Program-made: the position numbers and the translations under genes
The notes under the pieces: generated by a model
The model's database searches: none
The model's input: the letters and a program-made list of their open reading frames with translations, nothing else
What the model was told of the DNA's origin: nothing
Part shown: piece after piece, positions 602-40,874 of the stretch
Layout of the letters: each line of letters opens with the position of its first letter
Position numbering within the stretch: the stretch's first letter is position 1
NCBI RefSeq assembly: GCF_006345805.1
Contig: NC_043022.1
Span: forward strand, 14,012,001-14,076,000
Reading direction: 5' to 3'
Origin: Octopus sinensis
Lineage: Eukaryota
Length of the DNA: 64,000 nucleotides

Positions 602-3600
602 TCAAGAGTCGTTGGGAGTAATTGATTCAGCCTCGCTATCTTCATGTTCAGTTGGTTGTCTTCTGACTGTTTGAGATTGTTCAGAGGGTCTGTTATATAT
701 CATCAACTGTTCAGGGTGCCTTGTGTATGTCGCCAAGTGACTCTGGTACCCTGTGTCTGTCTGAAAATGTCCAGATTCTCTCTGCATCTGTTCAGGGTAC
801 CTTGTGTATGTCGCCAAGTGACTCTGGTACCCTGTGTCTGTCTGAAAATGTCCAGATTCTCTCTGCATCTGTTCAGGGTACTTTGTTTGTATTACTGAGT
901 GTCTCTGGTAACCCATGTCTGTCAGAACCTGTCCAGATTCTCTCTGCATCTGTTCAGAGTACCTTGTGTGCATCACCAAGTGACTCTGGTACCCTGTGTC
1001 TGTCTGACACTGTCTAAATTCTCTCTGATCTTTCGGCATCTGTTCAGGGTACTTTGTGTATGTCGCCAAGTGACTCTGGTACCCTGTGTCTGCCTGAAAA
1101 TGTCCAGATTCTCTTTGCATCTGTTCAGAGTACCTTGTGTGTGTTACCGAGTGTCTCTGGTACCCTGTGTCTGTTGGAACTTGTCCAAATTCTCTCTGAT
1201 CTTTCGGCATCAGTTCAGGGTACTTTGTGTATGTCGCCAAGTGACTCTGGTACCCTGTGTCTGTCTGAAAATGTCCAGATTCTCTCTGCATCTGTTCAGG
1301 GTACCTTGTGTATGTCGCCAAGTGACTCTGGTACCCTGTGTCTGTCTGAAAATGTCCAGATTCTCTCTGCATCTGTTCAGGGTACTTTGTTTGTATTACT
1401 GAGTGTCTCTGGTAACCATGTCTGTCAGAACCTGTCCAGATTCTCTCTGCATCTGTTCAGAGTACCTTGTGTGCATCACCAAGTGACTCTGGTACCCTGT
1501 GTCTGTCTGACACTGTCTAAATTCTCTCTGATCTTTCGGCATCTGTTCAGGGTACTTTGTGTATGTCGCCAAGTGACTCTGGTACCTGTGTCTGCCTGAA
1601 AATGTCCAGATTCTCTTTGCATCTGTTCAGAGTACCTTGTGTGTGTTACCGAGTGTCTCTGGTACCCTGTGTCTGTTGGAACTTGTCCAAATTCTCTCTG
1701 ATCTTTCGGCATCAGTTCAGGGTACTTTGTGTATGTCGCCAAGTGACTCTGGTACCCTGTGTCTGCCTGAAAATGTCCAGATTCTCTTTGCATCTGTTCA
1801 GAGTACCTTGTGTGTGTTACCGAGTGTCTCTGGTACCCTGTGTCTGTTGGAACTTGTCCAAATTCTCTCTGATCTTTCGGCATCTGTTCAGGGTACTTTG
1901 TGTATGTCGCCAAGTGACTCTGGTACCCTGTGTCTGCCTGAAAATGTCCAGATTCTCTTTGCATCTGTTCAGTGTACCTTGTGTGTGTTACCGAGTGTCT
2001 CTGGTACTCCGTGTCTGTTGGAACTTGTCCAAATTCTCTCTGACCTTTCGGCATCTGATCAGAGTACTTTGTGCAGGTCACCAAGTGTCTCTGGTTCTTT
2101 GTATCTGTCAGAACCTGTCCAAATTCTCTCTGATCTCTTAGCATCTGTTCAGGGCACCTTGTATCTTTTTGAAACAATTCTGAGTTTTCCTGATACCTCA
2201 GCAACTGCTCAGGGCCTTTACTGCCTGTCATAAACTGATAGCAATTTGTGCTTTTCGGAAACACTCTGGAGTCTTCCTGATGCCTCAAGTGCTCAGGGCC
2301 TTTACTGCCTGTCATAAACTGATAGCAATTTGTGCTTTTCGGAAACACTCTGGAGTCTTTCTGATGCCTCTTCAAGAGCTCAGGGACTTCCTCCTCTGTC
2401 ATAAACTGCTCATAGCACTTTGTGGAAGTCTGAGACAACCCAGAGTCTCTTTGGTCACTCTGTGATTGCTCAGAGTGTTTCTTGTCTGTTTGAAATAGTT
2501 CATCATGTTGGCAAGCTCCTCTACTGCTGAGCGAATCTGCACTTCCAAGCCATGTTCTATCATTTTCTGAAGAGCCTGACTTCCCAAACTTGTCAGGGAA
2601 CCAAGAGCAAGCGGAAGAAGAATAACCTCTCCCTGTTTGTAAAGAAGTTGACAAATCAGAGTTACTGCAAAATAAGGAATCATCAAATGTTTCATCAGGA
2701 CTTGGAGTGGGATTCCTTTTTACCAAAGCCCCAAACCCAGCAGAGGGGGTGTCACTAAGGTTTGTAACAGGCACGTCATTATGATCCCTGTCGCCCATTG
2801 TCCGACTAGGGAGACCTGAGTTGCTATTCAGACGCCTTAGCAGCTTCAAGGGATCTGGGGCCTGATGTTTAATAGGGGATTTCTTATCGTTCATACTGCA
2901 CTGCCGAACATAATCCCTAACAGGATCAAAAACTGTTCCTAAACTCCTTAAAGTTTCTTTTAAGGCATCTAGTTGCAGTGTTGTATCATAACCATTTTCT
3001 TCAATGTTTTTAAGCAACAATGTACATGTGGGTTTTACCCTTGTAAAAGAACTTTCACGTGTATCAAAATGCAGAGGATCAACAAGGCTTCCTTCTGATT
3101 TCCTTTCCATTGGATTACATAAAACTGAACTGAAATTCTCTCCATTTTTAGCCTGTCTTTTAGAAAAACTTTGAAATGTCAGGCTTCCAAGAAGTGAGAC
3201 ATTGGGCAACGTTGTATCTTGTCTTAAACAATCTTCTTCTCGCTGACTTGAAGACGTGAATGTCTGATTCACCGGATCTGAAGAAGGGAAAATGCTTTCT
3301 CCTCTGTCTTCAGTTAAAGACACTGAATTCAAAAGTAAACTTAACTTGGGCATGTTTCTGTCATGTTCGTAATTATCTGTGTCGGAAGCAATGTTTCTGA
3401 ATTCATTCAAACGAGCAGTATAATACTGGGATCTTGACAGTTGGTATTCAGGTGAAGAAGGAGGCAATCCATAGGGGGCTGAATGCTCTGTGGAAACATT
3501 CTGTGAATTAATATTGCAAAGACTTTCCACATAAATTTCTTCCTTGGTCATTTTAAACTTAATGACTTCTTTACAAGCGAGACAAGTGAAAGGTAAGCTC

Positions 3601-3764: not shown

Positions 3765-6700
3765 CTGGATAAGAAAAAATATAACAGGCCTTAAATGAGG
3801 AGAAAAATAGGGGTTAGTGATATTTATGATGATGGTGGCGGTGGTGGTGGTGGTGGTGGTAGTGGTGATGATGATGATGTTGGTGGTGGCAGCCGTGATG
3901 ACAACAAACAAAATATGATGGTAAAGATAATGGCAGTGATGACGAAGATCGAGGTGGTAGGAGGGGTGATGGATAATGGTGGTGGTGATGGTGAGAGTGA
4001 ATTTTAGGGCTTATGAATCTAAAATTTTATCTTCTCTTAAGATCATCATCATCATCATCGTTTAACGTCCGTTCTCCATGCTAGCATGGGTTGGACGGTT
4101 CGACCGGGGATCTGGGAAGCCAGGAGGCTGCACCAGACTCCAGTCTTATCTGGCAATGTTTCTACAGCTGGATGCCCTTCCTAACGCCAACCACTCTGTG
4201 AGTGTAGTGGGTGCTTTTTTACGTGCCACCCGCGCAGGTGCCAGGCGAGGCTGGCAATGGCCACGGTCGGATTGGTGCATTTTACGTGCCACTGGCATGG
4301 AAGCCAGTCGGGGCGGCACTGGCTTCGGCCACGATTCGGATGGTCCTTTTTACATGCCACCAGCACGGAAGCCAGTCGAGGCGGCGCTGGCATCGGCCAC
4401 GATTCGGATAGTGCTTTTTACGTACCACCAGTCCAGGGGTCCTGGCATCTGCTGGGTGCCAGTCATAGGATTGGTTCAATTTCGATTCCGATTCCGATTT
4501 CACTTGCCCCAACATGGGTGCCTGTCGTCGGATGAGGTTCGATATCGACTTCGCTTGCCTCAACAGGTCTTAGTGTGTCCAAGGGAGGAAAGGCATGCAT
4601 AAGATATTTGACTAAATACTACATTATTTTCAAAATAAAGTGAAACAAACACAATATATTTTAGGGTAACAAAAGAGTTAAAGTGATCCATACTAAAAGC
4701 TTCCATTAAAACTCCCACGTTAATTAATGTTCTAAATACCAGCTTAATAATGACCAAGTTATTTCAGTAAATTCTTCCTTATTTTCAAAATTAATTGAAA
4801 CAAAGGCTTTTATAATTTTATTCTTTTACTTGTTTCGGTCATTTGAATGTGGCCATGCTGGAGCACCGCCTCAAAGGGCTTTTTTAGTCAAACAAATCCA
4901 CCTCGGGACTTGTTTTTATTTTTTTTTAAAGCGAGTACTTATTCTATTGGTCTCGTTTGCCAAATTGCTAAGTTACGGGGATGTAAACACACCAACACCA
5001 GTTATCAAGCAGTGATGGGGTGAGGGTAAAGACAAACACAAAGACACACACACATATACAACAGGCTTCTTGCAGTTTCCACCTACCAAATCCACTCACA
5101 AGGCTTTGGTTGGCCTGAGGCTATGGTAGAGGACACTTGCCCAAGGTGGGACTGAACTTGGAACTTTGTGGTTGGGAAGCTGTTAATGTTTATATCTGCT
5201 TCTAAGACACCAATTTTGCAGGCCCAAGTCTAAATTAAATCCTTCACACATGTGGATCAAACGACTTCAAATCCCTAGCAAAAGTAGACCCCCATTTCAC
5301 CTAGAGGTGAGGAACACATTTGGCCACAGAATAAATATCTATTTCTTTACTACCCACAAGAGGCTAAACACAGAGAGGACAAACAAGGACAGACAAATGT
5401 ATTAAGTCGATTACATCGACCCCCAGTTCATAACTGGTACTTAATTTTTCATTTAAGGGCTGGTATTTATTATTACATTTGGACACTCTTATTTCTTTAC
5501 TACCCAGAAGGGGCTAAACACAGAGAGGGGACAAACAAGGACAGACAAACGGATTAAGTCGATTACATCGACCCCAGTGCGTAACTGGTACTTCATTTTT
5601 CATTTAAGGGCTGGTATTTATTATTACATTGGACACTCTTATTTCTTTACTACCCACAAGGGGCTAAACACAGAGAGGGGACAAACAAGGACAGACAAAC
5701 GGATTAAGTCGATTATATTGACCCCAGTGCGTAACTGGTACTTATTTAATCAACCCCAAAAGGATGAAAGGCAAAGTTGACCACGGCGGAATTTGAACTC
5801 AGAACGTAGCGGCAGACGAAATACCGCTAAGCATTTTGCCCGGCCTGCTAACGTTGCTGCCAGCTCGCCGCCTTTTGGCCACAGAATAAATATCATCAAT
5901 TGCTTACCTGTCGGTTACCTATGTTCAGTCTGACAAGATGCTCAAGGGTACAGCTGACAGCTTCACTCTGTGGACAGAGCGACAAATACCTGTCCTTGTT
6001 CACCAAAGCCTCCAACAGGACCCTCTCTGCTTCTGATTTATCACCTACTAAATGCAAGCAGTGCGCCAGCCAAATCTTCACCTCTGCATTGACATAGTGG
6101 TTTGGATGCACCTGGTTGTACAAACTGTTGGCTTCGCAGAGGAATGGAAGAGCCTCCTCACAGCAGCCTCTGCAATATGGACAGGTGAAACTTACAGTTA
6201 ATTATTACATCATCATCATCTTTTAACGTCCGTTCTCCATGCTAGCATGGGTTGGACGGTTTGGCCGGGGTCGGGGAAGCCAGGAGGCCTCACCAGGCTC
6301 CACTCTGATCTGGCAGTGTTTCTACAGCTGGATGTCCTTCCTAACGCCAACCACTCCGTGAGTGTAGTGGGTACTTTTTATGTGCCACCAGCACAGGGGC
6401 CAGAGCACGCTGACAAACAGCCATGATCGGTTGGTACTTCTATGTGCCACCAGCACAGGGGCCAGAGTACGCTGACAAACAGCCATGATCGGTTGGTACT
6501 TTTATGTGCCACCAGCACAGGGGCTAGAGCATGCTGACAAACAGCTATGATTGGTTGGTACTTTTATGTGCCACCAGCACAGGGGCCAGAGTACGCTGAC
6601 AAACAGCCATGATCGGTTGGTACTTTTATGTGCCACCAGCACAGGGGCCAGAGCACGCTGACAAACAGCCATGATCGGTTGGTACTTCTATGTGCCACCA

Positions 6701-8414
6701 GCACAGGGGCCAGAGTACGCTGACAAACAGCCATGATCGGTTGGTACTTTTATGTGCCACCAGCACAGGGGCCAGAGCATGCTGACAAACAGCTATGATT
6801 GGTTGGTACTTTTATGTGCCACCAGCACAGGGGCCAGAGTACGCTGACAAACAGCCATGATCGGTTGGTACTTTTATGTGCCACCAGCACAGGGGCCAGA
6901 GCACGCTGACAAACAGCCATGATCGGTTGGTACTTCTATGTGCCACCAGCACAGGGGCCAGAGTACGCTGAGAAACAGCTATGATCGGTTGGTACTTCTA
7001 TGTGCCACCAGCACAGGGGCCAGAGTACGCTGACAAACAGCTATGATTGGTTGGTACTTTTATGTGCCACCAGCACAGGGGCCAGAGTACGCTGACAAAC
7101 AGCCATGATCGGTTGGTACTTTTATGTGCCACCAGCACAGGGGCCAGAGCACGCTGACAAACAGCCATGATCGGTTGGTACTTCTATGTGCCACCAGCAC
7201 AGGGGCCAGAGTACGCTGAGAAACAGCCATGATTGGTTGGTACTTTTATGTGCCACCAGCACAGGGGCCAGAGCACGCTGACAAACAGCCATGATCGGTT
7301 GGTACTTCTATGTGCCACCAGCACAGGGGCCAGAGTACGCTGAGAAACAGCCATGATTGGTTGGTACTTTTATGTGCCACCAGCACAGGGGCCAGAGCAC
7401 GCTGACAAACAGCCATGATCGGTTGGTACTTCTATGTGCCACCAGCACAGGGGCCAGAGTACGCTGAGAAACAGCTATGATTGGTTGGTACTTTTATGTG
7501 CCACCAGCACAGGGGCCAGAGCACGCTGACAAACAGCCATGATCGGTTGGTACTTCTATGTGCCACCAGCACAGGGGCCAGAGTACGCTGAGAAACAGCT
7601 ATGATCGGTTGGTACTTTTATGTGCCACCAGCACAGGGGCCAGAGCATGCTGGCAAAAGGCCACGTTCGGATGGTGCTTTTTACGTGTCACCAGCACGAT
7701 TTACATTGTTCGTTATTAATTTTGACACAAGGCCAGCAATTTCAGGGGATGGGGTAAGTCAAGTGCATTGTTCAACTGGTACTTATTTCATTGACCTCGG
7801 AAAGGATGAAAGGCAAAGTGGACCTTAACGGAATTTGACCTCAGAATGTAAAGACAGACAAAATAATAATAAAACAACAACAACAATAATAATGATGTTC
7901 AGGGACCTTTCGAGTGGGATGGGTTACTTGACCAGAAGAAAATTCTAACTGGGTCCCACCTGCAAGGTCACGCTCTGTTTATCTTGATATGAGACCACCA
8001 TGTCTCGCACGTATGGTTGTGATGTATGTGCCTGGTGTACCCTTATCAGACGGGTAGTCATGATGGGTATACTGGGCTTTGTATATTTTACCCCAGTGTC
8101 ACTTTGATGGCATGAACTGCTCTCTCACTCAATAATAATAATAATAATAATAATAACAACAACAACAACAATGGTTTAAAATTTTGCCAGAAGGGCAGCA
8201 GTTTTGGGGGAGAGGGTGAGTCAATTACATCAACCCCAGTGTTCAACTGGTACTTATTTTATTGACCCCGAAAGGGTGAAAGGCAAAGTCAACCTCAGTG
8301 GAGTTTGAACTCAGAATGTGAAAACAGATACAACACTGCTAAAGGGAATCTAGCACCCCAACTCAGCAGGTTAACGATTCTTCCAGCTTGCCACCTTAGG
8401 TGGTAATAATAATA

Positions 8415-12200: not shown

Positions 12201-15200
12201 GAGAGTTTGAATGTTGTTGTTCTTGGTGTAATTGTAATAGCAGTCAGAGCGTTAGCTGCCGTCGATCATTTGCTATGATTGATGTCAGCTTGGGTCAGCA
12301 TCTGTTTGCCATATATCTGCTCTCTCTGCTGCATCCCAAAGCTCTCTGGTTAAGTAGCCAAGGTGTGCTGAATTTATACAGGTGTTTAGGCTCAGACGGA
12401 AAGGTGCAAAAAAGACGGGATTATTTGCTGGAGTCAGTTCTAGGCGGAGTTGTGATTGGTTAGATTTTATTTTTAATCATTTACTCTTTACTCTTATACT
12501 TGTTTCAGTCATTTGACTGCGGCCATGCTGGAGCACCGCCTTTAGTCAAGCAAATCGACCCCGAGACTTATTCTTTGTAAGCCCAGTACTTATTCTATCG
12601 GTCTCTTTTGCCGAACCGCTAAGTAACGGGGACGTACACACACCAGCATCGGTTGTCAAGCAATGCTAGGGGGACAAACATATACACACAAACACATACA
12701 TACATATATATATACATATATACGATGGGCTTCTTTCAGTTTCCGTCTACCAAATCCACTCACAAGGCTTTGGTCGGCCCGAGGCTATAGTAGAAGACAC
12801 TTGCCCAAGGTGCCATGCAGTGGGACTAAACTCGGAACCATGTGGTTGGTAAACGAGCTACTTACCACGCAGCCACTCCTGTGCCTATATTTGGGTAATA
12901 TTCTAGCAAATTTCAATCTCAGGTGATTGCTGAATATTCCTACCACTGCCACCCTCTTCCCCCATTGCTGCAATGCACCCAGCTCCCACCCTCCAACTTG
13001 CCTTCACCACCACCTCCACGACCTGCCCACACAGTAACCCCCACCTCTTCACACCAACAGAAATGAGATGAAAGTCTTACTTTCTCATGGTCACCATGCC
13101 GATATTCCACATCACAAGTGCCGTGTAGGGGTGAACCCAGCCAGTTCGTGTGCGGATCTCTTTTGCTTCGTGTAAGAAGTTCAGAGCTAAATCTAGTGAA
13201 AGAGAGAGAGAAAGAGAGACATAAAAATAGATACAGAGAGAAATAAAGATAGATCAAGAGGGAAATAGAGAGAGAGACATTGAGAGAGAGAGATACATTG
13301 AGAGAAAGATACATTGAGAGTGATAAAAATAGAAACAGAGATAAAGAGAGAGAGAGAGAGATTGGGAGAAAGAGAAGATACATTGAGAGAGATAAAAATA
13401 GAAACAGAGACAAAGAGAGAGAAAAAGAGAGATAAATAGAAAGAGAGAGAGACATAGATAGATAGAGACAGATAGATGGGTAGAGATAGATGGATATTGA
13501 GAGATAAAGATATAGAGATAGAGAAAATGATAGATAAATAGAAAAAAGAGAGAGAGAAGGACTTAGAGACAGGTAGATGGATGGAGATAGATAGAAGGAC
13601 ATTGAGAGAGAGATAGATAGATGGATAGAGATAAATAAATGGATGGATAGACAGACAAATAGACAGAGAGATAGATATAGAGATAAAAGAAACAATAAGA
13701 TATAGATAGATAATTAAGTTAAGTTAAGTTAATTTTTTGGCTCAAAAAGCAAAAAGCAAGGCCATGTAGGGGGGGGGGGGGACATGGAGTTATGTACAGG
13801 GAGGGTGTTCATGCAAAGAGTTCAGGCCATTTCTGGTCAAGAGAGACTTTGAACCGAGCGGTCGTCGGCATCTTCACTATCTCGTCCGGCAGTTTATTCC
13901 ACGGATCCGCAACCTGGACGGAGAAAGCCCCTCTCCTTCGATTGAGATGAAATCGTCGCAGATAGAGCTTTTCGGAGTGACCCCGCAGCCAACGCTCTTA
14001 AGTCGAACCATCATGTTAAGTTAAGTTAATTTTTTAGCTCAAAAAGCAAAAAGCAAGGCCATGTAGGGGGAGATGGAGTTATGTACAGGGAGGGTGTTCA
14101 TGCAAAGAGTTCAGGCCATTTGTGGTCAAGAGAAACTTTGAACCGAGCGGTCGTCGGCATCTTCACCATCTCGTCCGGCAGCTTATTCCATGGATCCACA
14201 ACCCGGACGGAAAAAGCCCCTCTCCTTTGATTGAGATGAAATCGTCGCAGATAGAGCTTTTCGGAGATAGAAATATAGAAAGGTAGATATACAGATACCA
14301 CAGGGAAATAGAAAGAGAGAGAGAGAGAGAGAGAGATCTTAGTACACATGATAATCAGATTGGTGTGAGCGGAGAGTTAGAAAAAAAGGGTGAGAAGGAG
14401 GGGGAGGAAAAGAGAAGATAAAAAAAAGGAAAAACAGGAACATACAAAAAAAAACCCAACAAAACGCTGCAAACTGTGATGGGTTTAATAAGATTAATCA
14501 AGTGAGTTATGCAAATAATTAGTTGACAATTAGTTGGGGTCATGGAAAACAATTAGCTGACAGTGATGGTTTGAAATCACAAAAATACCAAGCAAGGCAG
14601 ATAAGGCCAAATTGATTAATTAATCCGTCTGTTATCTTTTCCCTTTTACTTGTTTCAGTCGTTAGGCTGCGGCCATGCTGGAGCACCACTTTGAGGAGTT
14701 TTTACGTGAAGAGGAAGAGGGGATGAAGTGTGTGTGTGAGAGAGAGAGAGAGAGATATGGATATGGAGAAATAAAAACGAGAGTGGCGTGTAAAGGGAGA
14801 TAAATCTGTTATTCTCTCTTTTTACTTGTTTCAGTCATTTGACTGCGGCCATGCTGGAGCACTGCCTTTAGTCAAGCAAATCGACCCCAGGACTTATTCT
14901 TTCGAAGCCTAGTACTTATTCTATCGGTCTCTTTTGCTGAACCGCTAAGTTACGGGGACATAAACACACCAGCATCGGTTGTCAAGCGATGTTGGGGGGA
15001 CAAACACACACACATATAATATATATACATATATACGACAGGCTTCTTTCAGTTTCCGTCAACCAAATCCACTCACAAGGCTTTGGTAGGCCCGAGGCTA
15101 TAGGAGAAGACACTTGCCCAAGGTGCCACGCAGTGGGTCTGAACCAAGAACCATGTGGTTGGTAAGCAATCTACTTACCACACAGCCACTCCTGTTGATA

Positions 15201-30200: not shown

Positions 30201-33200
30201 TCTGCCAGCTCCCTGGCTGTGTGGTAAGAAGCCTGCTTCCCAACCACTAGGGTTCCGGGTTCAGTCACGCTGCGTGATACCTTGGACAAGTGTCTTCTGC
30301 TACAGCCTTGGGCCAACGAAAGCCTTGTAAGTGAATTTGGTAGATGGAACTGGAAGAAGCCTTATTTAATCGACCCCGAAAGGATGAAAAGCAAAGTTGA
30401 CCTCGGCGGAATTTGAACTCAGAACGTAATGGCAGACGAAATACCTATTTCTTTACTACCCACAAGGGGCTAAACACAGAGACGACAAACAAGGACAGAC
30501 AAACTGATTAAGTCGATTACATCGACCCCAGTGCGTAACTGGTACTTATTTAATCGATCCCGAAAGGATGAAAGGCAACGTTGACCTCGGCGGAATTTGA
30601 ACTCAGAACGTAGCAACGGGCGAAATACCGCTAAGCATTTCGCCCGGCATGCTAACGTTTCTAGCAGCTCGCCACCTTAAATGTACTAACCTTGTTATTT
30701 AACTAAATTCTTCTTTATTTTCAAAATTAATTGAAATGAACGCAAGCAGGTTATTTCAATAAAAATCATCATCATCATCATCATTTAATGTTCATTTTCC
30801 ATGCTGACATGATGTTAACAAAAAGGTTCAAATAAAATTTCATAACATGCAAATCAACAGAAAAAAAGAAATCAAATTTCAAAAATGCAAAAAGTGTTTT
30901 TTTTACTTCTGCTCTGAAGAGAATGTCCATAGGAAACCATCAACAGCGCCTTCTGCTTCTCTGTGCCTAGTTTCTTGGAGGCATCAAGAATTGCCTTGAA
31001 GAATTCTGTGGCAGCCTCAGGGTAACACAGATTGATGATGCTACGAGCTTCCACAGCAACCTATATAGGAAGATAAAAGTAATAGTGTAACAATAATAAT
31101 AATGATGATGATGATAATAATAACAATAACAAGAAGAAGAAGAAAAAGGACGATGACGACAAAGATCATCATCATCATCGTTTAACGTCTGTTTTCCGCG
31201 CTAGCACGGGTTGGACGGTTCGACCGGGGTCTGGGAAGCCAGGGGCTGCACCAGGCTCCAGTCTGATCTGGCAGAGTTTCTACAGCTGGATGCCCTTCCT
31301 AACGCCAACTACTCTGCGAATGTAGTGGGTGCTTTTTAGGTGCCACCTGCACAGGTGCCAGGGCGGGGTAGGCATCGGCCACAATCAGTTGGTGCTTTTA
31401 ACATGCCGCCGGCACAGAAGCCAGCCAAGGCGGTGCTGGCAACGGCCACGTTTGGATGGTGCTTTTTTTATGTTCCACCGGCACTGGAGCCAGTTGAGGC
31501 AGCGCTAGCATCGGCCACGTTCGGACGGTGCTTTTTATGTGCCACCGGCACAGTAGCCAGTCAAGGCGGCGCTGGCAACGATAATAATAATAATAATAAT
31601 AAGAAGAAGAAGAAGGACGACGACGATGAAGATAACAATAATAACAACAACAATAAGAAGAAGGACGACGACGATGAAGATAACAATAATAATAATAACA
31701 ACAACAACAATAATGGTTTCAAATCTTGACTCAATGGTAGCAATTTTTTGAGGGAGGGGATGAGTCGATTACATTGACCCCCCAGTGTGCAACTGGTACT
31801 TGTTTTTATTGACTTTGAAAGGACAAAAGGTAAAGTTGATCTTGGTGGAATTTGAACTCAGAACACGAAGACAGATGAAATACGGCTAAGTATTTTGCCT
31901 CACTTGTTAATGATTCTGCCAGCTTGTCACCATTTTACTAATAATAATAATAATAATATTCCGCTGAGGTCGACTTCGCCTTTCATCCTTTCAGGATCAA
32001 TAAATTAAGTACCAGTTGCATAACGGGGTTGATCTAATTGGCCGTCCCCCTCCGTCAAATTTCAGGTCTTATGCCTAGAGTAGAAAATAATAATAATAAT
32101 TTTGTTGTGTCTGGGGAGAGTCATTCTCTTTTAGTACCTTATTATTTAATACACTCACCGGTAAAATTTACACTTATTTCTTATTTTCATTTTCCTAAAA
32201 TTTTCGTTGCGTCTTGCAACCTTTTCAATAGTCTTGAAAGACTATTGAGTCAAGACTATTGAAAAGGTTGCAAGACGCAACGAAAATTTTAGGAAAATAA
32301 GAAATAAGTGGAAATTTTACCGGTGAGTGTATTAAATAATAAGGTACTAAAAGAGAATGACTCTCCCCAGACACAACAGAATATGCTTCAAACACACAAA
32401 CTCATATAAAGAATCTTGCAAACCAAATCCAAAAACGAAAAATAATAATAATAAAAAATGCTTTCTAATCAATGCATCAATGCCAACAGAAGACAACATT
32501 TCTCTAAAAGAAATGGAGAAACTCTCAAAATACAAAGACCTGGAAATAGAGGTAACCAGAATGTGGAGTTTAAAAACAGAAACAATTCCTATCATAGTAG
32601 GCGCATTAGGCATGATGAAAAAACATTCAGAGAAATACATAACAAAAACACCAGGGCTAACAAGTATATATAACATACAGGAAATAGCACAACCAGGCAC
32701 TGCACACATCCTACGCAGAACACTTTCAATACAGTGAAAATAAGAGAACCACAACAAACTACAGCACATACCCAAGGCACGTGCTTGGTCATGCAGTGAA
32801 AGCAAGTGGTGAAAATAAGACTGAAGAAGAAGAAGGAGGAGGAGGAGGTGGAAGAGAAGAAGAAGAAGAAGAGAAGAACAACAACAACACAACAAGGAAA
32901 GTAGCACTGCACACATCCTACGTAAAACACTTTCAATACAGCAAAGATAAGAGCACCACAACAAACCACAGCACATACCCAAGGCACGTGCTTGGTCATG
33001 CAGTGAAAGCAAGTGGTGAAAATAAGACTGAAGAGAAGAAGGAGGAGGAGGAGGTGGAAGAGAAGAAGAAGAAGAACAACAACAACACAACAAGGAAAGT
33101 AGCACTGCACACATCCTACGTAAAACACTTTCAATACAGCAAAGATAAGAGCACCACAACAAACCACAGCACATACCCAAGGCACGTGCTTGGTCATGCA

Positions 33201-33968: not shown

Positions 33969-34004
<36 letters not shown>

Positions 34005-34468
34005 CTGTGGTTGCCCCCCCCACATCACTTGACAACCAATGGTGGTGTGTTTACGTCCCCGTAACTTAGCGGTTCGGCAAGAGACCGAAAGAAGTAGCTT
34101 CATATCTTTAAAGACTTTGCTGAGACATAGATGTGCTTATGTTAAAGTACACACATAGATACAGAGGGAGACAGAGAGAGAGAGAGACACAGAGGGAGAA
34201 AGAGAGAGAGGAAGAGAGGAAGAGAGAGAGAGGGAAGAGAGAGAGGAAGAGAGAGGGAGAAAGAGGGAGACAGAGAGAGGAAGAGAAAGAGGAAGAGAGG
34301 GGAGAAAGAGGAGGAGAGAGGGGGAGGGAGAGAGGAAGAAAGAGAGAGAGAAAGTGGGAGAGAGAGAGGAAATAAGAGAGAGACAGAGAGAGCGGGAGAA
34401 AGAGAGAGAGAAAGAGGGAGGGAGAGAGAGGAAGAAAGAGAGAGGGAGAGAGGAAGAAAGAGAGAAGA

Positions 34469-34500
<32 letters not shown>

Positions 34501-34639
34501 GAAGAAAGAGAGAAGAGAGAGAGGAAGAGAGAGAGAGAGACGAATGAATGGATGTCAACAGAATTAAAGTTTCAACTGACATTTCAGATTTATTTATTAA
34601 AGACCAATCTTTCTCTTCCCTCTACACACACATACACAC

Positions 34640-34692
<53 letters not shown>

Positions 34693-37341
34693 CTTATGTT
34701 AACATGGATTTAGTACACGTTTACGCATGCATAATTTCTGTTATTCGTTGCTGTTCCACTTCTTCAACGAATGATACAATTGACTCTGGGTGGGTTAGAA
34801 AAGAATGTGAGAGAGTTATGAAAAATACTCGCAAAGCATTTGGTCTGCTCCGATCCTCTCCCTCATGGTTATTGTGTCAATATGTCTGATATAGGCATGA
34901 GGCCACAAATTCATAGGAAATTGTGAATTTAATTACCCTTAGTACATAGTGTTTATTTCGTCATCGAAAAAGTTTTAAAATATACTAGCTTGGGCAGCTT
35001 TTAAGCTAGTATGTAGCTTTTAACCCTTTCGTTACTGTATTTATTTTGAGATGCTCTGTGTTTCTTTTAATTACTTTAAATATAACAAAGAATTTAGTAA
35101 AACAATTTAGTTATCATTAAGCTAGTGTTAGGAACATAAATTGTGACTAAGATTTGGTGGAAGATTTTAATTCAAAACTTATGAAAACAAGACATTTGTA
35201 CTCAGAGCCAGAATTGGTTTCAGCTGGGTTGGTATTGAAAGGGTTAAGAATTGTTTCTCTATTATATATTTTAACCCTTTTGTTACCCTATTTCTTTAGA
35301 GATGATCGGTGTTTCTTTCAATTAATTTAAAATATAATGAAGAATTTAGTAAAATAACTTAGTTATCATTCAGCTAGTTTTAGGAACATGGGGTCAATTT
35401 GCTCGACTAAAGGCGGTGCTCCAGCATGGCCACAGTCACGTGACTGAAACAAGTAAAAGAGTAAAAGATAGACACACACATACCTTGCAGTAAATCTCAA
35501 AAGTTTCTCCATCTGAAGGTGAATGAATGGCTTCTAGAATCAACTTAGCAAAATTCTCCCACTTGTGATCTAAAATCCCAGCAACATTATAGATAAGTCC
35601 TTTGTCATTGATTTTCTCTGCTTTTATGAGGGCTTCTCCTATAATATGATTAAACTTCAACCTCGTGCAGTTTTCGTGGGATATGTGTGTCATGTGATTC
35701 TGGCAGTGCTGATGCACAATCTGTGGTAACACGAACTCTGTTGAGCTGTTGTTCGTAGGCTTAATCAGGCCTTGTTTCATCAGCGGGTAAACCAGATTGA
35801 ATTTGGCTTGCTGCTCTCTTTTGCAGTTTGTCATAGCCATAATGTCATGAAGGCTGAACCTTCCAGGAAAATAACTCAGCTCAGAGAGAGCTTGCTGCTG
35901 TTCCGTGGAAAGCTGTTGGAGATATTCCTTAAAAGACTCATGAAATTGGTGCGGCAGAAAATTGTCAACATTTTGGGACTCCTGAAGAAAATCCAAAATT
36001 TCACTGGATGATGTGCCTGCTGGACATTCAGACAATTTATCACACAAGGACACAATCCTTCCAGGCACACCATTGCAGAAATTTGAGCAGAAAGATTTAA
36101 GATTCCTTGAATATTTCATATTTGCAGGTAAAGACTGTTCAACAAGGTGAAGAGAATCAAAATATTGCAGTGGTTTTAGATGAAGTGTGATACCCTGAAC
36201 GCGCTTCATTTCTGAAGGTCCACTCAGTATCAAGATGACTTTAACGTGGTTCCAGGTGATTAGTTTCTCGCAGAAATCGTCAAAGTCTTCCGTAGCATTT
36301 TTCCCAAAAATATTTTGAAAATTATCTGCGACAAGCAATGTTTTAAATCTTTCATCGGGACAGAAGAATTCTTTCTTGGGCCAGTCTTTCCGAATCACCT
36401 TATAGCAAATCCGAGGGAAATCACTCTTCATTTCATTCAAGATCTGAAACATGAGAAGAAAAGCGAAAGGTAGAATAATTGCCATCAAAAGAAGAAGCAA
36501 AAGTTTATCATCATCATCATCATTTTAATATCTATTTTTCCATGTTCAAGTGTCTTCTGCTATAGCCCCAGGCCGACCAATGCCTTGTGAGTGGATTTGG
36601 TAGATGGAAACTGAAAGAAGCCTGTCGTAGCTGCTATTTCTAATGAGTTCAGTATGCGGCAAAGTAATTTATTTTACTAAGCCCTTTTATATAATGTAAT
36701 AATTTGAATTCGCCTTAAATGGTCCCTTTGCATACTGAATACTTGGTGAAATTGATTAATTAATTAATTTTACCCTCAATTGTTGAAATTATAATTCATC
36801 TCTCTCTATATAATGCCGCGGATTTTACCGAAAAAAGCATAGTGTTTACTGATTTTAACCCACGCTGGTGGAAAGGGGAGAGCAGAAATTCTTCGCTTGC
36901 ATTTGAGTTTGTTGGCACTGTTAGTTGGGAGCAGATCTTCAGAAGCGAGAGGAAGCCGAAAGGGTATGCTCCTACTTTCAGTGTTTTCAAATCCAAACCA
37001 GGGAGTTCTGAGCTGATGATAGAAATGTCGGATTTTGACTAATCTTGAAACGTACGTTCTCAAATAACCTTTGCACTTGATTTTTAATGTCTCTACCCCC
37101 ATATTGCGTGAGTTGAGTGAGCAAACACTATATGAGAGAGGTTTTCTTTAAGTATTGGAAATAGTTTTAAAAAAGTTTTTTTAGCTGCTATTTCTAATGA
37201 GTTCAGTATGCGGCAAAGTAATTTATTTTACTAAGCCCTTTTATATAATGTAATAATTTGAATTCGCCTTAAATGGTCCCTTTGCATACTGAATACTTGG
37301 TGAAATTGATTAATTAATTAATTTTACCCTCAATTGTTGAA

Positions 37342-37383
<42 letters not shown>

Positions 37384-40300: not shown

Positions 40301-40874
40301 AGGACACCTATCCTTCCATTGTAAATAATGAACACATAAATGTAAATTTAGTATCTAAAAAGAGAAGCTATAGGTTTTAAAGTTTGTGTTTTAAATATTC
40401 TCTTTGCCAGTGATTTTTAAAAGAAATATTCATATCTGAAGGCCAGATGACTTCTGAAATTGTATGTACGTGCATACATATGCATATATGTTTGTAGGTA
40501 CAAGAGATCAGCTGAGCTGCAGATGTAAATATCTATTTAAAAATCAATGAGAAAGAATATTCACAAAGAATATCTTCAAAACCTATATATATGAAGCACC
40601 AGCGCTACAAGATGATGCATGACTAATTCAAATCGATGTAAATTAACAAGCATTTGACGAAGAAATCTGAATGCTAACGAGTTAAATTGGTTCAATATTG
40701 TATATAAGACATGAAAATTAGCATTTTTTTTGTCTTTTGAGAATATCTACTTACTTCTGTAACTAAACAGGTCTTGCCCACAGACGGTTGACCATAAACT
40801 TGGAGCAGTCGGTGCTTTGATTTGAGAAAATTGCGAAGGAATGTTTTCTCTGATTCGCGTCCAATTAAATTCAT
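602..40874 (-). CDS. Multi-exon STAND (NB-ARC-like) NTPase - TPR - tandem-repeat-tail protein (NLR-like), about 1762 aa, 10 coding exons
   Basis: Exon lengths 120, 960, 154, 148, 110, 114, 144, 112, 262 and 3163(+2) nt join in one frame via GT-AG junctions (phases 0,0,1,2,1,1,1,2,0). Motifs: LIGRE pre-P-loop, Walker A GQPSVGKT, Walker B LLVADN, GxP-like CNGVP, winged-helix LSYFPGRFS and LMKQGLI, then TPRs such as HPYTALVMWNIG and HPAVCYMLNNVG. Two 1-nt deletions (1585 and 1416) interrupt the last exon in this sequence. Confidence 0.88.
700..2140 (-). repeat. Coding minisatellite: 17 subunits of 90 nt (type A, 7 copies) or 81 nt (type B, 10 copies)
   Basis: A = YPEQMPKDQREFGQVPTDTGYQRHSVTHTR; B = YSEQMQRESGHFQADTGYQSHLATYTK; counted by hand from the translation. 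Confidence 0.95.
4044..4612 (-). mobile_element. 5'-truncated RTE 3' UTR copy; related copies at about 1-135, 6208, 10565, 16135, 20267, 21975, 23050, 31165, 38184, 39570, 46630, 47215 (+) and 48418
   Basis: Matches the 3' end of the RTE at 55377-55950 (catcatcgtttaacgtcc...ggatgcccttcctaacgccaaccactc...tttttacgtgccacc). Confidence 0.85.
5908..6169 (-). CDS. Coding exon 9: last TPRs (GCCEEALPFLCEANSL...AEVKIWLAHCLHLVGDKSEAERVLLEAL...)
   Basis: Acceptor ccatattgcag|A GGC (phase 2); donor CAG|GTAAGC (phase 0). Confidence 0.9.
6381..7650. repeat. 62-bp minisatellite, about 20.5 copies, inside an RTE tail
   Basis: Unit tgtgccaccagcacaggggccagagtacgctgacaaacagccatgatcggttggtactttta; starts at 6381, 6443 ... 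7621. Confidence 0.97.
10783..11012 (+). mobile_element. SINE family B; other copies at about 5335(-), 15293(-), 28545(+), 30360(-), 41065(-), 45590(+), 53385(-), 60730(+), 62600(+)
   Basis: ggcgagctggcagaa..ttagcacgccgggcgaaatg...gttcaaattccgccgaggtcgactttgcctttcatcctttcggggtcgat... recurring many times; the 60730 copy has a 14-bp TSD. Confidence 0.88.
11734..12136. mobile_element. Merlin-like MITE; related copies at about 19810-20205 and 43445-43780
   Basis: 28-bp perfect TIR GGATCTTTTCGGTTTGAACGGCAGTTTT; 8-bp TSD CAGAATTT (11726-11733 and 12137-12144). Confidence 0.75.
13081..13192 (-). CDS. Coding exon 8: TPR (LALNFLHEAKEIRTRTGWVHPYTALVMWNIGMVTMR)
   Basis: Acceptor ctctttcactag|AT TTA; donor GAGAAA|GTAAGA (phase 2); kinesin-light-chain-like long TPR pattern. 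Confidence 0.9.
13713..14265 (-). mobile_element. Two tandem CR1-like LINE 3' ends with (CTTAA)n tails; a third copy at 16286-16480
   Basis: LYLRRFHLNxRRGAFSVRVxDPWNKLPDExVKMPTTARFKVSLD translation; ttaag repeats on the plus strand. Confidence 0.8.
15683..16078 (+). mobile_element. tRNA-derived SINE family A (octopus-type); other copies at about 12481(-), 14815(-), 26461(+), 27678(+), 37378(+), 38695(-), 49715(-), 54318(+), 63490(-)
   Basis: Head ggcgcaggagtggctgtgtggtaag...ggttcagtcccactg (A/B-box-like), ccttgggcaagtgtctt core, internal (TA/TG)n, (AGTAAAAG)n tail; more than 10 similar copies in the window. Confidence 0.9.
17040..17500. repeat. Degenerate (GAT)n tract in the intron just after exon 7
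   Basis: Direct reading; source of the poly-Asp and poly-Met ORFs. Confidence 0.9.
17593..17736 (-). CDS. Coding exon 7: TPR (GGLPNLALQFYLSSL...LCNVAGQFSKNKLRH), symmetric phase 1-1
   Basis: Acceptor tactcttcgcag|CT GGT; donor CATG|GTAAGT. Confidence 0.88.
18658..18771 (-). CDS. Coding exon 6: TPR (NHSKAGQVLHEQL...HPAVCYMLNNVGLNIER), symmetric phase 1-1
   Basis: Long polypyrimidine acceptor ttcttccctcag|GA AAC; donor CGCT|GTAAGA; typical TPR helix-A motif HP.v..mLNNvG. Confidence 0.88.
20680..21757. mobile_element. piggyBac-like non-autonomous element; shorter relatives at 35020-35247 and about 44660-45302
   Basis: TTAA-CCCTTTCGTTAC ... GTAACGAAAGGG-TTAA terminal inverted repeats with TTAA at both ends. 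Confidence 0.8.
22886..22995 (-). CDS. Coding exon 5: TPR (AAEKALETT...HAKIYSYVHLTHNLIFA); absent from the ORF track
   Basis: Acceptor ctcttcattaag|G GCT; donor GCTG|GTGAGT; phase 2 in, phase 1 out; completes GKLEKGIRAAEKAL. Confidence 0.85.
23440..24775. repeat. About 30-bp minisatellite with higher-order organisation, interrupted by a SINE fragment (about 24190-24440)
   Basis: Alternating variants cataaacatccacaatgacccatgtatgt / cataaacaccaacagtgatctgtgtaagt. Confidence 0.9.
24807..24954 (-). CDS. Coding exon 4: TPR (SLAVKEAQWHFKSALRIL...YNYMSLNYYRQGKLEKGI)
   Basis: Acceptor aattttgcag|GT AGT; donor ATAAG|GTATTA (phase 2). Confidence 0.88.
25740..26115 (+). mobile_element. tRNA-derived SINE family C (A box TGGCCCAGTGG, B box GGTTTCGATTCC) with a conserved central body
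   Basis: Head shared with 59265-59060 and 61712-61396; body shared with the palindrome arms at 51730-51927 and 52085-52265. Confidence 0.8.
27084..27478 (+). mobile_element. Non-autonomous Helitron; other copies at 50764-51162(-), 51175-51469(-), about 52320-52707(+), 59767-60165(-)
   Basis: 5' TC(T/C)TATATATAAA and 3' GC-rich hairpin (CCCG...CGGG) followed by CTAG, between A and T, no TSD. Confidence 0.75.
29170..29790. repeat. GA-rich polypurine tract with internal duplications; similar tracts at 13200-13710 and 34150-34540
   Basis: Direct reading. Confidence 0.9.
30907..31060 (-). CDS. Coding exon 3: first TPR-like helices (VAVEARSIINLCYPEAATEFFKAIL...)
   Basis: Acceptor cttcctatatag|GTT GCT; donor AGAA|GTAAAA (phase 1); phase matches both neighbours. 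Confidence 0.85.
32104..32377. repeat. Near-perfect 274-bp hairpin (about 130-bp arms, 12-nt loop)
   Basis: gttgtgtctggggagagtcattctc...gtcttga [aagactattgag] tcaagac...gagaatgactctccccagacacaac. Confidence 0.95.
32456..33550 (+). mobile_element. R4/Dong-like (restriction-like endonuclease) non-LTR 3' fragment with 4 tandem copies of its 3' end and (GAA)n tails
   Basis: KCFLINASMP...EKLSKYKDL...IPIIVGALG...GTAHILRRTL; starts immediately after (AAT)n; gcactgcacacatcctacg recurs at about 32697, 32903, 33103 and 33417. Confidence 0.8.
35484..36443 (-). CDS. Coding exon 2: remainder of NB-ARC, HD1 and winged helix (320 aa)
   Basis: Acceptor catgtttcag|ATC TTG AAT; donor TGCAAG|GTATGT; lies within the 354-aa ORF; Walker B LLVADN, GVP, LSYFP, LMKQGLI, WENF motifs. 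Confidence 0.92.
40755..40874 (-). CDS. Coding exon 1: start codon and P-loop (MNLIGRESEK...GQPSVGKTCLVTE)
   Basis: ATG at 40874; 40 codons; donor GAA|GTAAGT at 40754 (phase 0); pyrimidine-rich acceptor ...ctcttttag at 40966 for the same exon. Confidence 0.85.

What the first reader, a model, noticed from the sequence alone, without database searches (positions are those of the whole stretch)
602..40874. Hidden 10-exon NLR-like gene: NB-ARC/STAND + TPR + giant repetitive tail
Seen: ten phase-compatible GT-AG exons over 40 kb give one ORF of about 1762 aa with P-loop, Walker B, GxP and winged-helix motifs, about 7 long TPRs and a roughly 1050-aa tail. Established: STAND NTPases with superstructure repeats (NB-ARC/NACHT + TPR/WD40/LRR) are switch-like sensors in bacterial, fungal, plant and animal immunity and cell death, normally ordered effector-NOD-sensor. 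Inference: this is a NOD-first, TPR-sensor receptor with a lineage-specific repetitive module appended after the sensor, a candidate cephalopod innate-immune or allorecognition system. I do not recognise it as a named gene.
Basis: partly seen in the sequence, partly recalled or inferred. Interest (0 to 1): 0.85.

Follow-up and report, generated by a model that had tools for sequence, protein, structure and literature searches.

The report
Octopus NB-ARC–TPR gene with disordered tail
The window holds a real, conserved octopus gene for a switch-type ATPase (NB-ARC-like domain plus TPR repeats) with a long disordered repetitive tail; public annotation splits and misnames it, and nothing here shows that it works in immunity.

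Summary
The ten-exon gene exists on the minus strand (40874 down to 1476). Every intron is GT-AG and all phases fit. As the window stands the ORF is 1470 aa, not 1762. The syntenic O. vulgaris locus lacks both deletions and reads through to the stop at 602.

The N-terminal 360 aa fold as NBD-HD1-WHD. Their nearest solved relatives are plant NLR NB-ARC domains, CED-4, Apaf-1 and the archaeal STAND-TPR protein PH0952. On its own, the octopus protein stays below Pfam's NB-ARC threshold. About eight TPR hairpins follow, then a helical cap with a CxxC motif, then a tail of at least 670 aa predicted disordered, with 27/30-aa Tyr/Gln/Arg/His-rich repeats.

O. bimaculoides models join TPR to tail, and the Argonauta model joins NOD, TPR and tail. 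O. vulgaris annotation splits the gene into "kinesin light chain 4-like" and a separate 842-aa ORF, and leaves out the NOD exon.

Relatives occur in molluscs, hemichordates and echinoderms. This is a new variant of the known invertebrate NB-ARC–TPR class. The immune or allorecognition role is untested.

The parts
40755..40874 (-). Exon 1 (aa 1-40): start ATG at 40874, 'LIGRE' lead-in and P-loop GQPSVGKT (40770-40793). The donor is GTAAGT.
   Evidence: It is 95% identical to the O. vulgaris P0004 N-terminus. An in-frame TGA lies 12 codons upstream.
35484..36443 (-). Exon 2 (aa 41-360): the rest of the NBD (Walker B LLVAD at 36324-36338), HD1 with GxP (GVPG at 36060-36071), the winged helix (LSYFPGRF) and the start of the helical arm. 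It is absent from the O. vulgaris and O. bimaculoides models retrieved.
   Evidence: 99.7% nt identity to O. vulgaris with no indel. P0001 is 78% identical over 322 aa with an open frame. AF2 and Foldseek.
30907..31060 (-). Exon 3 (aa 361-411): start of the TPR solenoid.
24807..24954 (-). Exon 4 (aa 412-460): TPR.
22886..22995 (-). Exon 5 (aa 461-497): TPR.
18658..18771 (-). Exon 6 (aa 498-535): TPR.
17593..17736 (-). Exon 7 (aa 536-583): TPR.
13081..13192 (-). Exon 8 (aa 584-620): TPR.
5908..6169 (-). Exon 9 (aa 621-708): the last TPRs. NCBI isoform X2 of O. vulgaris skips it, which shifts the frame.
   Evidence: paralogue P0003 aligns here. Paralogue, O. bimaculoides and Argonauta proteins run continuously across the E9|E10 junction.
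1476..3764 (-). Exon 10 as it reads in this window (aa 709-1470, stop at 1476-1478). It holds a helical cap with the CxxC motif (to about aa 800), then the disordered tail with conserved short motifs, then the first part of the 27/30-aa repeat array.
   Evidence: The acceptor at 3764 is also used by O. vulgaris isoform X2 (E8 to E10 gives KNVKNT*). Tail pLDDT is about 30 in the orthologue model.
602..1475 (-). Continuation of the same coding repeat and the conserved C-terminus (...RRQPTEHEDSEAESITPNDS, stop at 602-604). In this window it is out of frame with the upstream ORF.
   Evidence: It is in frame in O. vulgaris. The C-terminal motif is conserved in O. bimaculoides and Argonauta.
1584..1586 (-). 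Frame change 1: GG here, GGG in O. vulgaris (1-nt deletion in a homopolymer).
1414..1416 (-). Frame change 2: ATGGTTACC here, ATGGGGTACC in O. vulgaris (1-nt deletion plus a substitution in a G-run).
707..2136 (-). Coding minisatellite: 17 units of 81/90 bp (27/30 aa) forming a 171-bp super-unit. O. vulgaris has 12 units. A duplicated block of units accounts for the extra copies here, and its first copy carries both frame changes.

Best explanation
This is a genuine protein-coding gene conserved across cephalopods. It encodes a STAND NTPase with these parts:
- a NOD of the NB-ARC (AP-ATPase) type: NBD, HD1 and winged helix, with no N-terminal effector domain;
- a helical arm and about eight TPR hairpins;
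- a short helical cap with a CxxC motif;
- a disordered C-terminal tail of at least 670 aa (about 960 aa in the intact O. vulgaris-type frame). The tail carries a few conserved short linear motifs and a copy-number-variable array of 27/30-aa Tyr/Gln/Arg/His-rich repeats.

Shown here: the exon structure, the fold class, the TPRs, the predicted disorder, the open frame kept across species, and the fragmented annotation.

Inferred by analogy with PH0952/MalT, Apaf-1/CED-4 and plant NLRs:
- At rest the NOD is closed on a nucleotide and held shut by arm and TPR contacts.
- A ligand bound by the TPR solenoid releases the autoinhibition.
- The NOD then opens and multimerises.
- There is no death-fold or TIR domain, so the output must be either the clustering of the C-terminal tails (recruiting partners through their motifs and repeats) or a partner that docks on the oligomer.

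The biological process is unknown. Immunity is one possibility and is not favoured by the data.

The two frame changes in the repeat are most simply unpolished homopolymer errors in a repeat, or else a recent truncating allele. The window alone cannot decide.
For: - Gene model: ten GT-AG exons in phase.
- Conservation against O. vulgaris: 0 indels and 0.72% substitutions in 3749 nt of exon; introns show 9.2 gap openings per kb and 2.78%.
- Selection: dN/dS is about 0.25 for the NOD and about 0.21 for the TPRs, from few substitutions.
- NOD class: a 15-sequence NOD profile hits 6mfv PH0952 (1.6e-12), plant NLR NB-ARC domains and Apaf-1 (1.7e-10, profile positions 10-337). 22 of 44 family members hit Pfam NB-ARC, best 2.4e-11.
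- Fold: AF2 pLDDT 85.5, pTM 0.79. Foldseek top hits are NRC2, ZAR1, Roq1, Sr35, CED-4 (TMq 0.61) and Apaf-1.
- TPR: TPR_12 scores 45.3 bits. The solenoid has pLDDT above 90 in the orthologue model.
- Tail belongs to the protein: the ORF runs on from the E10 acceptor in phase with E9. It is intact in O. vulgaris, O. bimaculoides XP_052832851.1 and A0A0L8GW66 and Argonauta GAB1602180.1.
- Paralogue P0003 aligns across the E9|E10 junction (E=1e-14).
- No indel occurs in 1.6 kb of non-repeat tail, where about 4.5 are expected even at the low rate of the neighbouring intron.
- Transcript-like contigs of a homologue carry NOD, TPR and a disordered tail in one 1195-aa ORF.
- Mechanistic analogy: PMC6468293.
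Against: - The window protein alone fails Pfam's thresholds for NB-ARC (12.3 against 23.5 bits), AAA_16 and NPHP3_N.
- Several catalytic or switch residues are not canonical. The second Walker B acidic residue is absent. No sensor-1 Arg is seen after the 'ILILSG' strand. The position of the MHD histidine is Pro. About 30 residues are missing between the P-loop and Walker B relative to the family. The NOD may therefore bind nucleotide but not cycle.
- No transcript evidence was available for this locus. The only NCBI model of the O. vulgaris orthologue that I retrieved skips E2 and E9 and stops six codons into E10.
- The tail's dN/dS against O. vulgaris is about 1.7 (13 non-synonymous, 2 synonymous).
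- In this window the ORF is truncated by two frame changes.
Confidence: 0.72

Rival explanations
1. One reading: the gene is an innate-immune or allorecognition receptor. Its TPRs sense non-self and its repetitive tail is a lineage-specific addition to that system.
For: STAND NTPases with repeat sensors act in immunity or cell death in plants, animals, fungi and bacteria (established knowledge; PMC6321704). The nearest solved folds are plant NLRs, CED-4 and Apaf-1. The tail evolves fast and its repeat number differs between close relatives (17 against 12 units).
Against: No expression, induction or polymorphism data were available. The family in octopus is small, with a few paralogues and no expansion. 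One orthologue each was retrieved from O. vulgaris, O. bimaculoides, Argonauta and Acanthosepion. The TPR sensor is the most conserved region, which is the opposite of what diversifying sensors show. There is no death-fold or TIR effector. PMC6321704 notes that NLR-like proteins with TPR, WD40 or ANK repeats are not thought to recognise PAMPs.
Confidence: 0.2
2. The tail is not part of the NOD-TPR protein. It is either a separate gene, as annotated in O. vulgaris (842 aa), or untranslated 3' sequence of transcripts that end early in E10.
For: The O. vulgaris record calls L001:48080-50608 as a separate gene. Isoform X2 stops six codons into E10. The tail's dN/dS is about 1.7 and its substitution rate is close to that of intron 9.
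Against: The frame is open from the E10 acceptor, in phase with E9, with no ATG needed. The first 90 aa of E10 are homologous to the C-terminus of paralogues that lack any tail and fold with the TPR domain. Three O. bimaculoides models and the Argonauta model join TPR and tail. The ORF has stayed open, and the C-terminal motif conserved, from Octopus to Argonauta.
Confidence: 0.1
3. The NOD is a degenerate pseudo-ATPase. The protein is then a constitutive TPR/IDR scaffold that keeps the STAND fold for structure only, or mainly makes NOD-less isoforms.
For: The Walker B, sensor-1 and MHD positions are non-canonical and the NBD is shortened. E2 is left out of the O. vulgaris and O. bimaculoides models retrieved. 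Skipping E2 keeps the reading frame.
Against: The P-loop is intact. E2 is kept as a 320-codon open frame at 99.7% nt identity in O. vulgaris, 78% aa identity in a further species, and about 54% aa identity in Argonauta. The AF2 model is confident throughout the NOD.
Confidence: 0.25
4. In this genome the gene is a truncated allele or an incipient pseudogene. The two frame changes are real, and the protein ends at aa 1470 without the last ~290 residues or the conserved C-terminal motif.
For: The window sequence as given has both 1-nt deletions. Both lie in one copy of a recently duplicated repeat block.
Against: They are the only indels in about 4.4 kb of coding sequence. Both are in G homopolymers inside a tandem repeat, where assembly polishing typically fails. 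The downstream repeat frame and the C-terminus are otherwise intact.
Confidence: 0.25

Closest known systems
NB-ARC (AP-ATPase) NODs of plant NLRs, Apaf-1 and CED-4
   Same: The NOD has the same NBD-HD1-WHD fold and these are its best structural and profile matches. It has a P-loop, a GxP ('GLPL'-like) motif and a WHD 'FPxxF' motif.
   Different: There is no CARD, CC or TIR effector, and TPR replaces LRR or WD40. The MHD histidine and the second Walker B acidic residue are not conserved. The protein alone scores below Pfam's NB-ARC threshold. The long C-terminal disordered tail has no counterpart.
STAND NTPases with a TPR sensor: PH0952 (6mfv), MalT, AfsR
   Same: The domain order is NOD, arm, TPR. 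PH0952 is the top sequence-profile hit over the whole NOD, and AfsR is also hit. The autoinhibition model of PMC6468293 is the best mechanistic template.
   Different: Those proteins are prokaryotic transcription regulators or orphans with DNA-binding effector domains. The octopus protein has none, and it adds a CxxC cap and a disordered tail of at least 670 aa.
Invertebrate NB-ARC–TPR proteins (placozoans, Hydra, corals) and 'NB-ARC domain-containing' proteins of bivalves, gastropods, hemichordates and crinoids
   Same: Same class. The family members found here are from Lottia, Patella, Batillaria, Pinctada, Potamilus, Solemya, Ylistrum, Glandiceps and Anneissia. The domain combination is known in non-bilaterians (PMC6321704).
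   Different: Many of the described ones carry CARD or Death-like N-termini and occur in expanded clusters. The cephalopod branch is effector-less, low in copy number, diverged enough to fall below Pfam's NB-ARC threshold, and tail-bearing.
Kinesin light chain (the NCBI name for the O. vulgaris fragment)
   Same: TPR_12-type repeats. KLC TPR structures are the best PDB matches to the TPR region.
   Different: There is no N-terminal heptad-repeat coiled coil for kinesin heavy chain; a NOD sits there instead. This is not a KLC.
Fungal NLR-like proteins (NB-ARC or NACHT with TPR, ANK or WD40) that signal through short prion-forming motifs
   Same: STAND plus superstructure repeats, with a low-complexity signalling element in place of a globular effector. 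This is an analogy only.
   Different: In fungi the amyloid motif is short and N-terminal (my own knowledge, not tested here). Here the low-complexity region is C-terminal, hundreds of residues long, and has no tested amyloid or condensate behaviour.

Membership tests
STAND NTPase, NB-ARC / AP-ATPase clade | Walker A P-loop GxxxxGK[ST] | tested here: met
   GQPSVGKT at aa 28-35. G28, G33 and K34 are invariant in the 15-sequence family alignment.
STAND NTPase, NB-ARC / AP-ATPase clade | Walker B hhhhD[D/E] with a catalytic second acidic residue | tested here: inconclusive
   LLVAD80-N: the Asp is present but the second acidic residue is Asn. The family consensus is hhhFDNxED, and some members lack even the Asp.
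STAND NTPase, NB-ARC / AP-ATPase clade | Three-subdomain NOD (NBD, helical HD1, winged helix) resembling solved NB-ARC structures | tested here: met
   AF2 pLDDT 85.5, pTM 0.79. Foldseek hits at E 1e-10 to 1e-7 are NRC2, NRC3, ZAR1, Roq1, Sr35, RPP1, CED-4 and Apaf-1, ahead of ORC/Cdc6.
STAND NTPase, NB-ARC / AP-ATPase clade | Pfam NB-ARC (PF00931) at or above its gathering score | tested here: not met
   The window protein scores 12.3 bits against a cutoff of 23.5, on the P-loop region only. By contrast, 22 of 44 family members match at E<=0.01, best 2.4e-11, and the family profile hits NB-ARC structures.
STAND NTPase, NB-ARC / AP-ATPase clade | GLPL / GxP motif in HD1 | tested here: met
   CNGVPGR. 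P167 is invariant and G165 nearly invariant in the family (consensus CxGLPLxI).
STAND NTPase, NB-ARC / AP-ATPase clade | MHD-type histidine at the end of the WHD that contacts ADP | tested here: not met
   The aligned position is Pro in 'EFVLPQIVHQH', where family members have RFxIHGILRD or MHS. It is variable (H, Q, N, P) in the family.
STAND NTPase, NB-ARC / AP-ATPase clade | Nucleotide-dependent switching and oligomerisation | not testable with these tools
   This needs biochemistry.
Animal NLR in the strict sense (NACHT-LRR) | NACHT domain | tested here: not met
   The window protein has no NACHT hit. Only 7 of 44 relatives hit NACHT, against 22 for NB-ARC. No NACHT structure is among the top 60 PDB profile hits.
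Animal NLR in the strict sense (NACHT-LRR) | C-terminal leucine-rich repeats | tested here: not met
   Only TPR families are found.
TPR superfamily | Pfam TPR model above its gathering score, and a helical-hairpin solenoid | tested here: met
   TPR_12 scores 45.3 bits against a cutoff of 30.1. The orthologue model has 16 helices (8 hairpins) at pLDDT above 90.
Kinesin light chain | N-terminal heptad-repeat coiled coil that binds kinesin heavy chain, followed by six TPRs | tested here: not met
   The N-terminus is a P-loop NOD. Similarity to KLC is confined to the TPR region.
Apaf-1 / CED-4 apoptosome proteins | N-terminal CARD (and WD40 sensor in Apaf-1) | tested here: not met
   The ATG is 4 residues before the 'GRE' lead-in of the NOD, with an in-frame stop upstream. 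No CARD or WD40 hit.
Nephrocystin-3-like (NPHP3_N plus TPR_NPHP3) | Pfam NPHP3_N at or above its gathering score | tested here: not met
   19.5 bits against a cutoff of 24.8, on the P-loop only.

The most novel reading that the evidence does not exclude
The C-terminal tail is the effector of this effector-less STAND. When the NOD multimerises, the clustered Tyr/Gln/Arg/His-rich 27/30-aa repeats (12-17 per chain, variable in number) and the conserved short motifs would drive a higher-order assembly, a condensate or a templated polymer, that passes on the signal. That would be a C-terminal, repeat-encoded counterpart of death-fold or amyloid signalling in NLRs. Repeat number would then tune the threshold and could differ between individuals.
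Probability: 0.1. Interest if true: 0.7.

Novelty: new variant of a known kind. Interest (0 to 1): 0.4.

Why it matters
- It corrects the annotation of a conserved cephalopod gene. The gene is currently split into a misnamed 'kinesin light chain 4-like' fragment and an orphan ORF, and its ATPase exon is unannotated.
- It places a small, diverged branch of NB-ARC–TPR STAND proteins in cephalopods, with relatives in other molluscs, hemichordates and echinoderms.
- The domain order (no N-terminal effector, and a long, fast-evolving, copy-number-variable disordered tail after the sensor) is unusual for STAND proteins. It raises a testable question: how does such a protein signal?
- It is not evidence for a new immune system. 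Without expression or functional data its role is open.

Tried and rejected
- A PDB sequence search with the 4-sequence cephalopod profile found nothing. It became informative only after a 15-sequence NOD profile was built from the exhaustive representative search.
- Pfam on single exons gave only sub-threshold noise.
- The bacterial promoter/terminator scan is irrelevant to a eukaryotic gene and is ignored.
- Rfam at gathering thresholds found nothing in the window.
The O. bimaculoides orthologue was used as a proxy for the TPRs and tail.
- No contig was on record for P0149, so dN/dS against O. bimaculoides could not be computed.
- The alternative N-terminal exon of the O. bimaculoides RefSeq model is not present in this window or in the O. 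vulgaris locus.
- The tail of the homologue P0008 shows no sequence similarity to this tail. 'A disordered tail' is therefore shared, but homology of the tails beyond Octopoda is not shown.
- Considered and rejected: kinesin light chain, Apaf-1 orthologue, NACHT-type NLR, NPHP3 (see the membership tests).
Absence of hits there is not evidence of absence.
Full report
**What is in the sequence.**
The feature lies on the minus strand. I started from the two long minus-strand ORFs and from tblastn of the few database relatives, and fixed ten exons:

| Exon | Window coordinates |
|---|---|
| E1 | 40874-40755 |
| E2 | 36443-35484 |
| E3 | 31060-30907 |
| E4 | 24954-24807 |
| E5 | 22995-22886 |
| E6 | 18771-18658 |
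| E7 | 17736-17593 |
| E8 | 13192-13081 |
| E9 | 6169-5908 |
| E10 | 3764-1476 |

All nine introns (0.9-6.9 kb) start with GT and end with AG. The phases fit, and the joined CDS of 4413 nt has a single stop at its end, giving 1470 aa. An in-frame TGA lies 12 codons upstream of the ATG.

Inside the coding tandem repeat the sense frame changes twice, 0 to 2 at about 1584-1586 and 2 to 1 at about 1414-1416. The ORF therefore stops at 1476. Against the syntenic O. vulgaris locus, each change is a 1-nt deletion in a G-run: GG for GGG, and GGTT for GGGGT. In O. vulgaris the frame runs unbroken to ...EAESITPNDS*, the stop that corresponds to window 602. These are the only indels in about 4.4 kb of coding sequence. 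Both lie in one copy of a duplicated block of repeat units. Unpolished homopolymer errors in a repeat are the simplest reading, but a real truncating allele cannot be excluded from the window alone.

**Is it a real gene?**
The window is collinear with O. vulgaris OX597839.1:35.17-35.23 Mb (locus L001) at about 97% identity, so it comes from a sister species or a divergent haplotype.
- All ten exons and all splice sites are conserved.
- Over 3749 nt of exon there are 27 substitutions (0.72%) and no indel. Aligned intron has 2.78% substitutions and 9.2 gap openings per kb.
- dN/dS is about 0.25 in the NOD and about 0.21 in the TPRs. Counts are small: 2 non-synonymous to 2 synonymous, and 3 to 4.
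- The non-repeat tail has dN/dS of about 1.7 (13 to 2) and a substitution rate close to that of the neighbouring intron. It has no indel in 1.6 kb, where about 4.5 are expected even at the low rate of intron 9. That pattern fits a disordered region in which the frame is kept but most residues are free to change.

**State of the annotation.**
NCBI's 'kinesin light chain 4-like isoform X2' of O. vulgaris (P0004, 306 aa) consists of E1, E3-E8 and the E10 acceptor. It skips E2, which keeps the frame, and E9, which shifts it, so that it ends KNVKNT* six codons into E10. The same record calls the rest of E10 as a separate 842-aa gene. The O. bimaculoides models for LOC106874516 (XP_052832851.1, A0A0L8GVK1, A0A0L8GW66) join E3-E10 with the whole tail but lack the NOD. 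Argonauta hians GAB1602180.1 (1677 aa, N-terminally partial) holds NOD, TPRs and a tail of about 900 aa in one protein, ending ...RREPSEHEEQP. The window's tail has the matching motif ...RRQPTEHED just before its C-terminus. Paralogue P0003 aligns without a break across the E9|E10 junction (E=1e-14) and ends about 15 residues after 'ESLCNINS'. A cephalopod homologue, P0008, is carried on 4.1-4.8 kb Logan contigs as an uninterrupted 1195-aa ORF with stops upstream of its ATG. Those contigs look like mRNAs encoding NOD, TPRs and a disordered tail of roughly 350 aa. The full model is thus supported piecewise, and in one piece in Argonauta. No transcript data for this locus itself could be examined.

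**What the N-terminal domain is.**
On its own the protein gives only sub-threshold, P-loop-centred Pfam hits: AAA_16 24 bits, ATPase_2 19.3, NPHP3_N 19.5 and NB-ARC 12.3. The exhaustive profile search found 127 relatives. They come from cephalopods, gastropods (Lottia, Patella, Batillaria), bivalves (Pinctada, Potamilus, Solemya, Ylistrum), a hemichordate (Glandiceps) and a crinoid (Anneissia). All are 'uncharacterized' or 'NB-ARC domain-containing'.
- Of 44 aligned members, 22 hit Pfam NB-ARC (best 2.4e-11), 26 hit AAA_16 and 7 hit NACHT.
- A NOD-only profile of 15 members hits the archaeal STAND-TPR protein PH0952 (6mfv, 1.6e-12), many plant NLR NB-ARC domains, and Apaf-1 over profile positions 10-337 (1.7e-10). 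No NACHT structure is in the top 60.
- AlphaFold2 on residues 1-375 with that alignment gives pLDDT 85.5 and pTM 0.79, with a five-stranded NBD, a helical HD1 and a winged helix.
- Foldseek ranks NRC2, NRC3, ZAR1, Roq1, Sr35, RPP1, CED-4 (TMq 0.61) and Apaf-1 ahead of ORC/Cdc6.

There are caveats. The second Walker B acidic residue is Asn. I see no sensor-1 Arg after the 'ILILSG' strand. The MHD histidine position is Pro. About 30 residues between the P-loop and Walker B are missing relative to the family. ATP binding is likely; hydrolytic cycling is uncertain.

**The rest of the protein.**
TPR_12 passes Pfam's threshold. In the AF2 model of the O. bimaculoides orthologue, the region matching E3-E9 forms 16 helices (eight hairpins) at pLDDT above 90. 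Four more helices follow, encoded by the first ~90 codons of E10. That cap carries a CxxC motif (LPFTCLACKE) shared with cephalopod paralogues and several gastropod relatives. Everything after it has pLDDT of about 25-35, apart from one weak helix. It is rich in Ser, Thr, Gln, Arg, Asp and Glu and poor in hydrophobic residues.

Identity of the window protein to its orthologues falls towards the tail:

| Region | O. bimaculoides | Argonauta |
|---|---|---|
| NOD | absent from this model | 54% |
| TPR | 91% | 59% |
| Cap (E10 head) | 85% | 44% |
| Non-repeat tail | 72% | 28% |

A few islands survive between Octopus and Argonauta: PKLSLLLNSVSLTED, TPSAGFGALVKR and the C-terminal RPSxQxxTxRRxPxEHE. 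The repeat array (707-2136; 81/90-bp units) encodes alternating 27- and 30-aa units such as MQRESGHFQADTGYQSHLATYTKYPEQ and MPKDQREFGQVPTDTGYQRHSVTHTRYSEQ. There are 17 units here and 12 in O. vulgaris. Argonauta has its own array of roughly 32-aa repeats. The tail of homologue P0008 shows no sequence similarity to this one.

**How it most likely works.**
Shown: the domain order is NOD, arm, TPR, cap, disordered tail, with no N-terminal effector. Inferred from PH0952/MalT (PMC6468293) and from the apoptosome and resistosome literature: a closed, nucleotide-bound resting state held by arm and TPR contacts; release by a ligand bound in the TPR solenoid; then opening and multimerisation of the NOD. 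With no death-fold or TIR domain, the output must be either the clustered tails or a docking partner. I put about 0.5 on the switch-and-oligomerise part. About 0.25 goes to a degenerate NOD that serves only as a scaffold.

**Function.**
Nothing here tests immunity or allorecognition. The pattern is low copy number, one orthologue retrieved from each of four cephalopods, and a TPR sensor that is the most conserved region. That is unlike expanded, diversifying immune NLR repertoires. The literature I read treats TPR- and WD40-bearing NLR-like proteins as unlikely PAMP sensors (PMC6321704). I found no paper on this gene. I give the immune reading about 0.2.

**Novelty.**
NB-ARC–TPR proteins are a known kind in invertebrates and prokaryotes. 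This cephalopod branch is a variant of it: effector-less, diverged below Pfam's thresholds, with a CxxC cap and a long, fast-evolving C-terminal disordered tail whose repeat number varies. The most useful concrete result is the corrected gene model. Interest is moderate.

Noticed in passing
window 56279-58959 (-), and 60216-62173 (+): There are fragments of a non-LTR (LINE-type) retrotransposon: an APE endonuclease ORF (58432-58959), and reverse-transcriptase ORFs (57237-57965 and 56279-57211, the latter with a PHD-like finger), broken into separate frames. The plus-strand ORFs at 60216-62173 gave no Pfam hit.
   Followed up: partly
window 12480-12890, 15681-16083, 26460-26875, 27677-28083, 38683-39086, 49700-50114 (both orientations): A dispersed repeat of about 400 bp (SINE-like) occurs at least six times in the introns and flanks, and many more times in the O. 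vulgaris locus (84-94% identity between copies). A partial tandem version with a ~190-bp unit lies at 37351-37940. Rfam gave no hit at gathering thresholds.
   Followed up: partly
window 6370-7697 (intron 8): A very regular 62-bp minisatellite with 21.4 copies and 93% matches. The array is also present in O. vulgaris.
   Followed up: no
window 23472-24069 and 24437-24775 (intron 4, next to exon 4): Nested tandem repeats (periods 29, 89 and 205, and 147) built on a 'CATAAACATCCACAATGACC' core.
   Followed up: no
window 3470-3560 (-), protein aa about 766-790: A CxxC motif (LPFTCLACKE...ESLC) lies about 60 residues after the last TPR. It is conserved in the cephalopod paralogues and in several gastropod relatives (CSAC, CFVC, CSLC). 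It could be a small metal-binding or redox element capping the solenoid.
   Followed up: partly
L001 (O. vulgaris) 10001-47885 and 48080-50608; O. bimaculoides LOC106874516: Public models fragment this gene. O. vulgaris isoform X2 skips E2 and E9 and stops six codons into E10, and the tail is called as a separate 842-aa gene. O. bimaculoides models lack E1 and E2, and XP_052832851.1 carries an intron-derived insert (TVWWKEGAVFFM, pLDDT below 50) and a 47-aa N-terminal exon that is absent from this window.
   Followed up: yes
window 707-2136 against L001 49469-50503: The coding minisatellite differs in copy number between the window (17 units) and O. vulgaris (12 units). The extra units are a duplicated block, which suggests it is a VNTR-like coding polymorphism.
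   Followed up: partly
window 41400-50914 (-): The O. vulgaris record has another called gene (86-aa product, running off the locus end) just upstream of this gene, in the same orientation. I did not examine it.
   Followed up: no
window 42584-43012, 34163-34540, 3833-3889: Long microsatellites: (TAA)n of about 146 copies, (AG)n of about 190 copies, and a (TGG)19 tract just upstream of the exon 10 acceptor.
   Followed up: no
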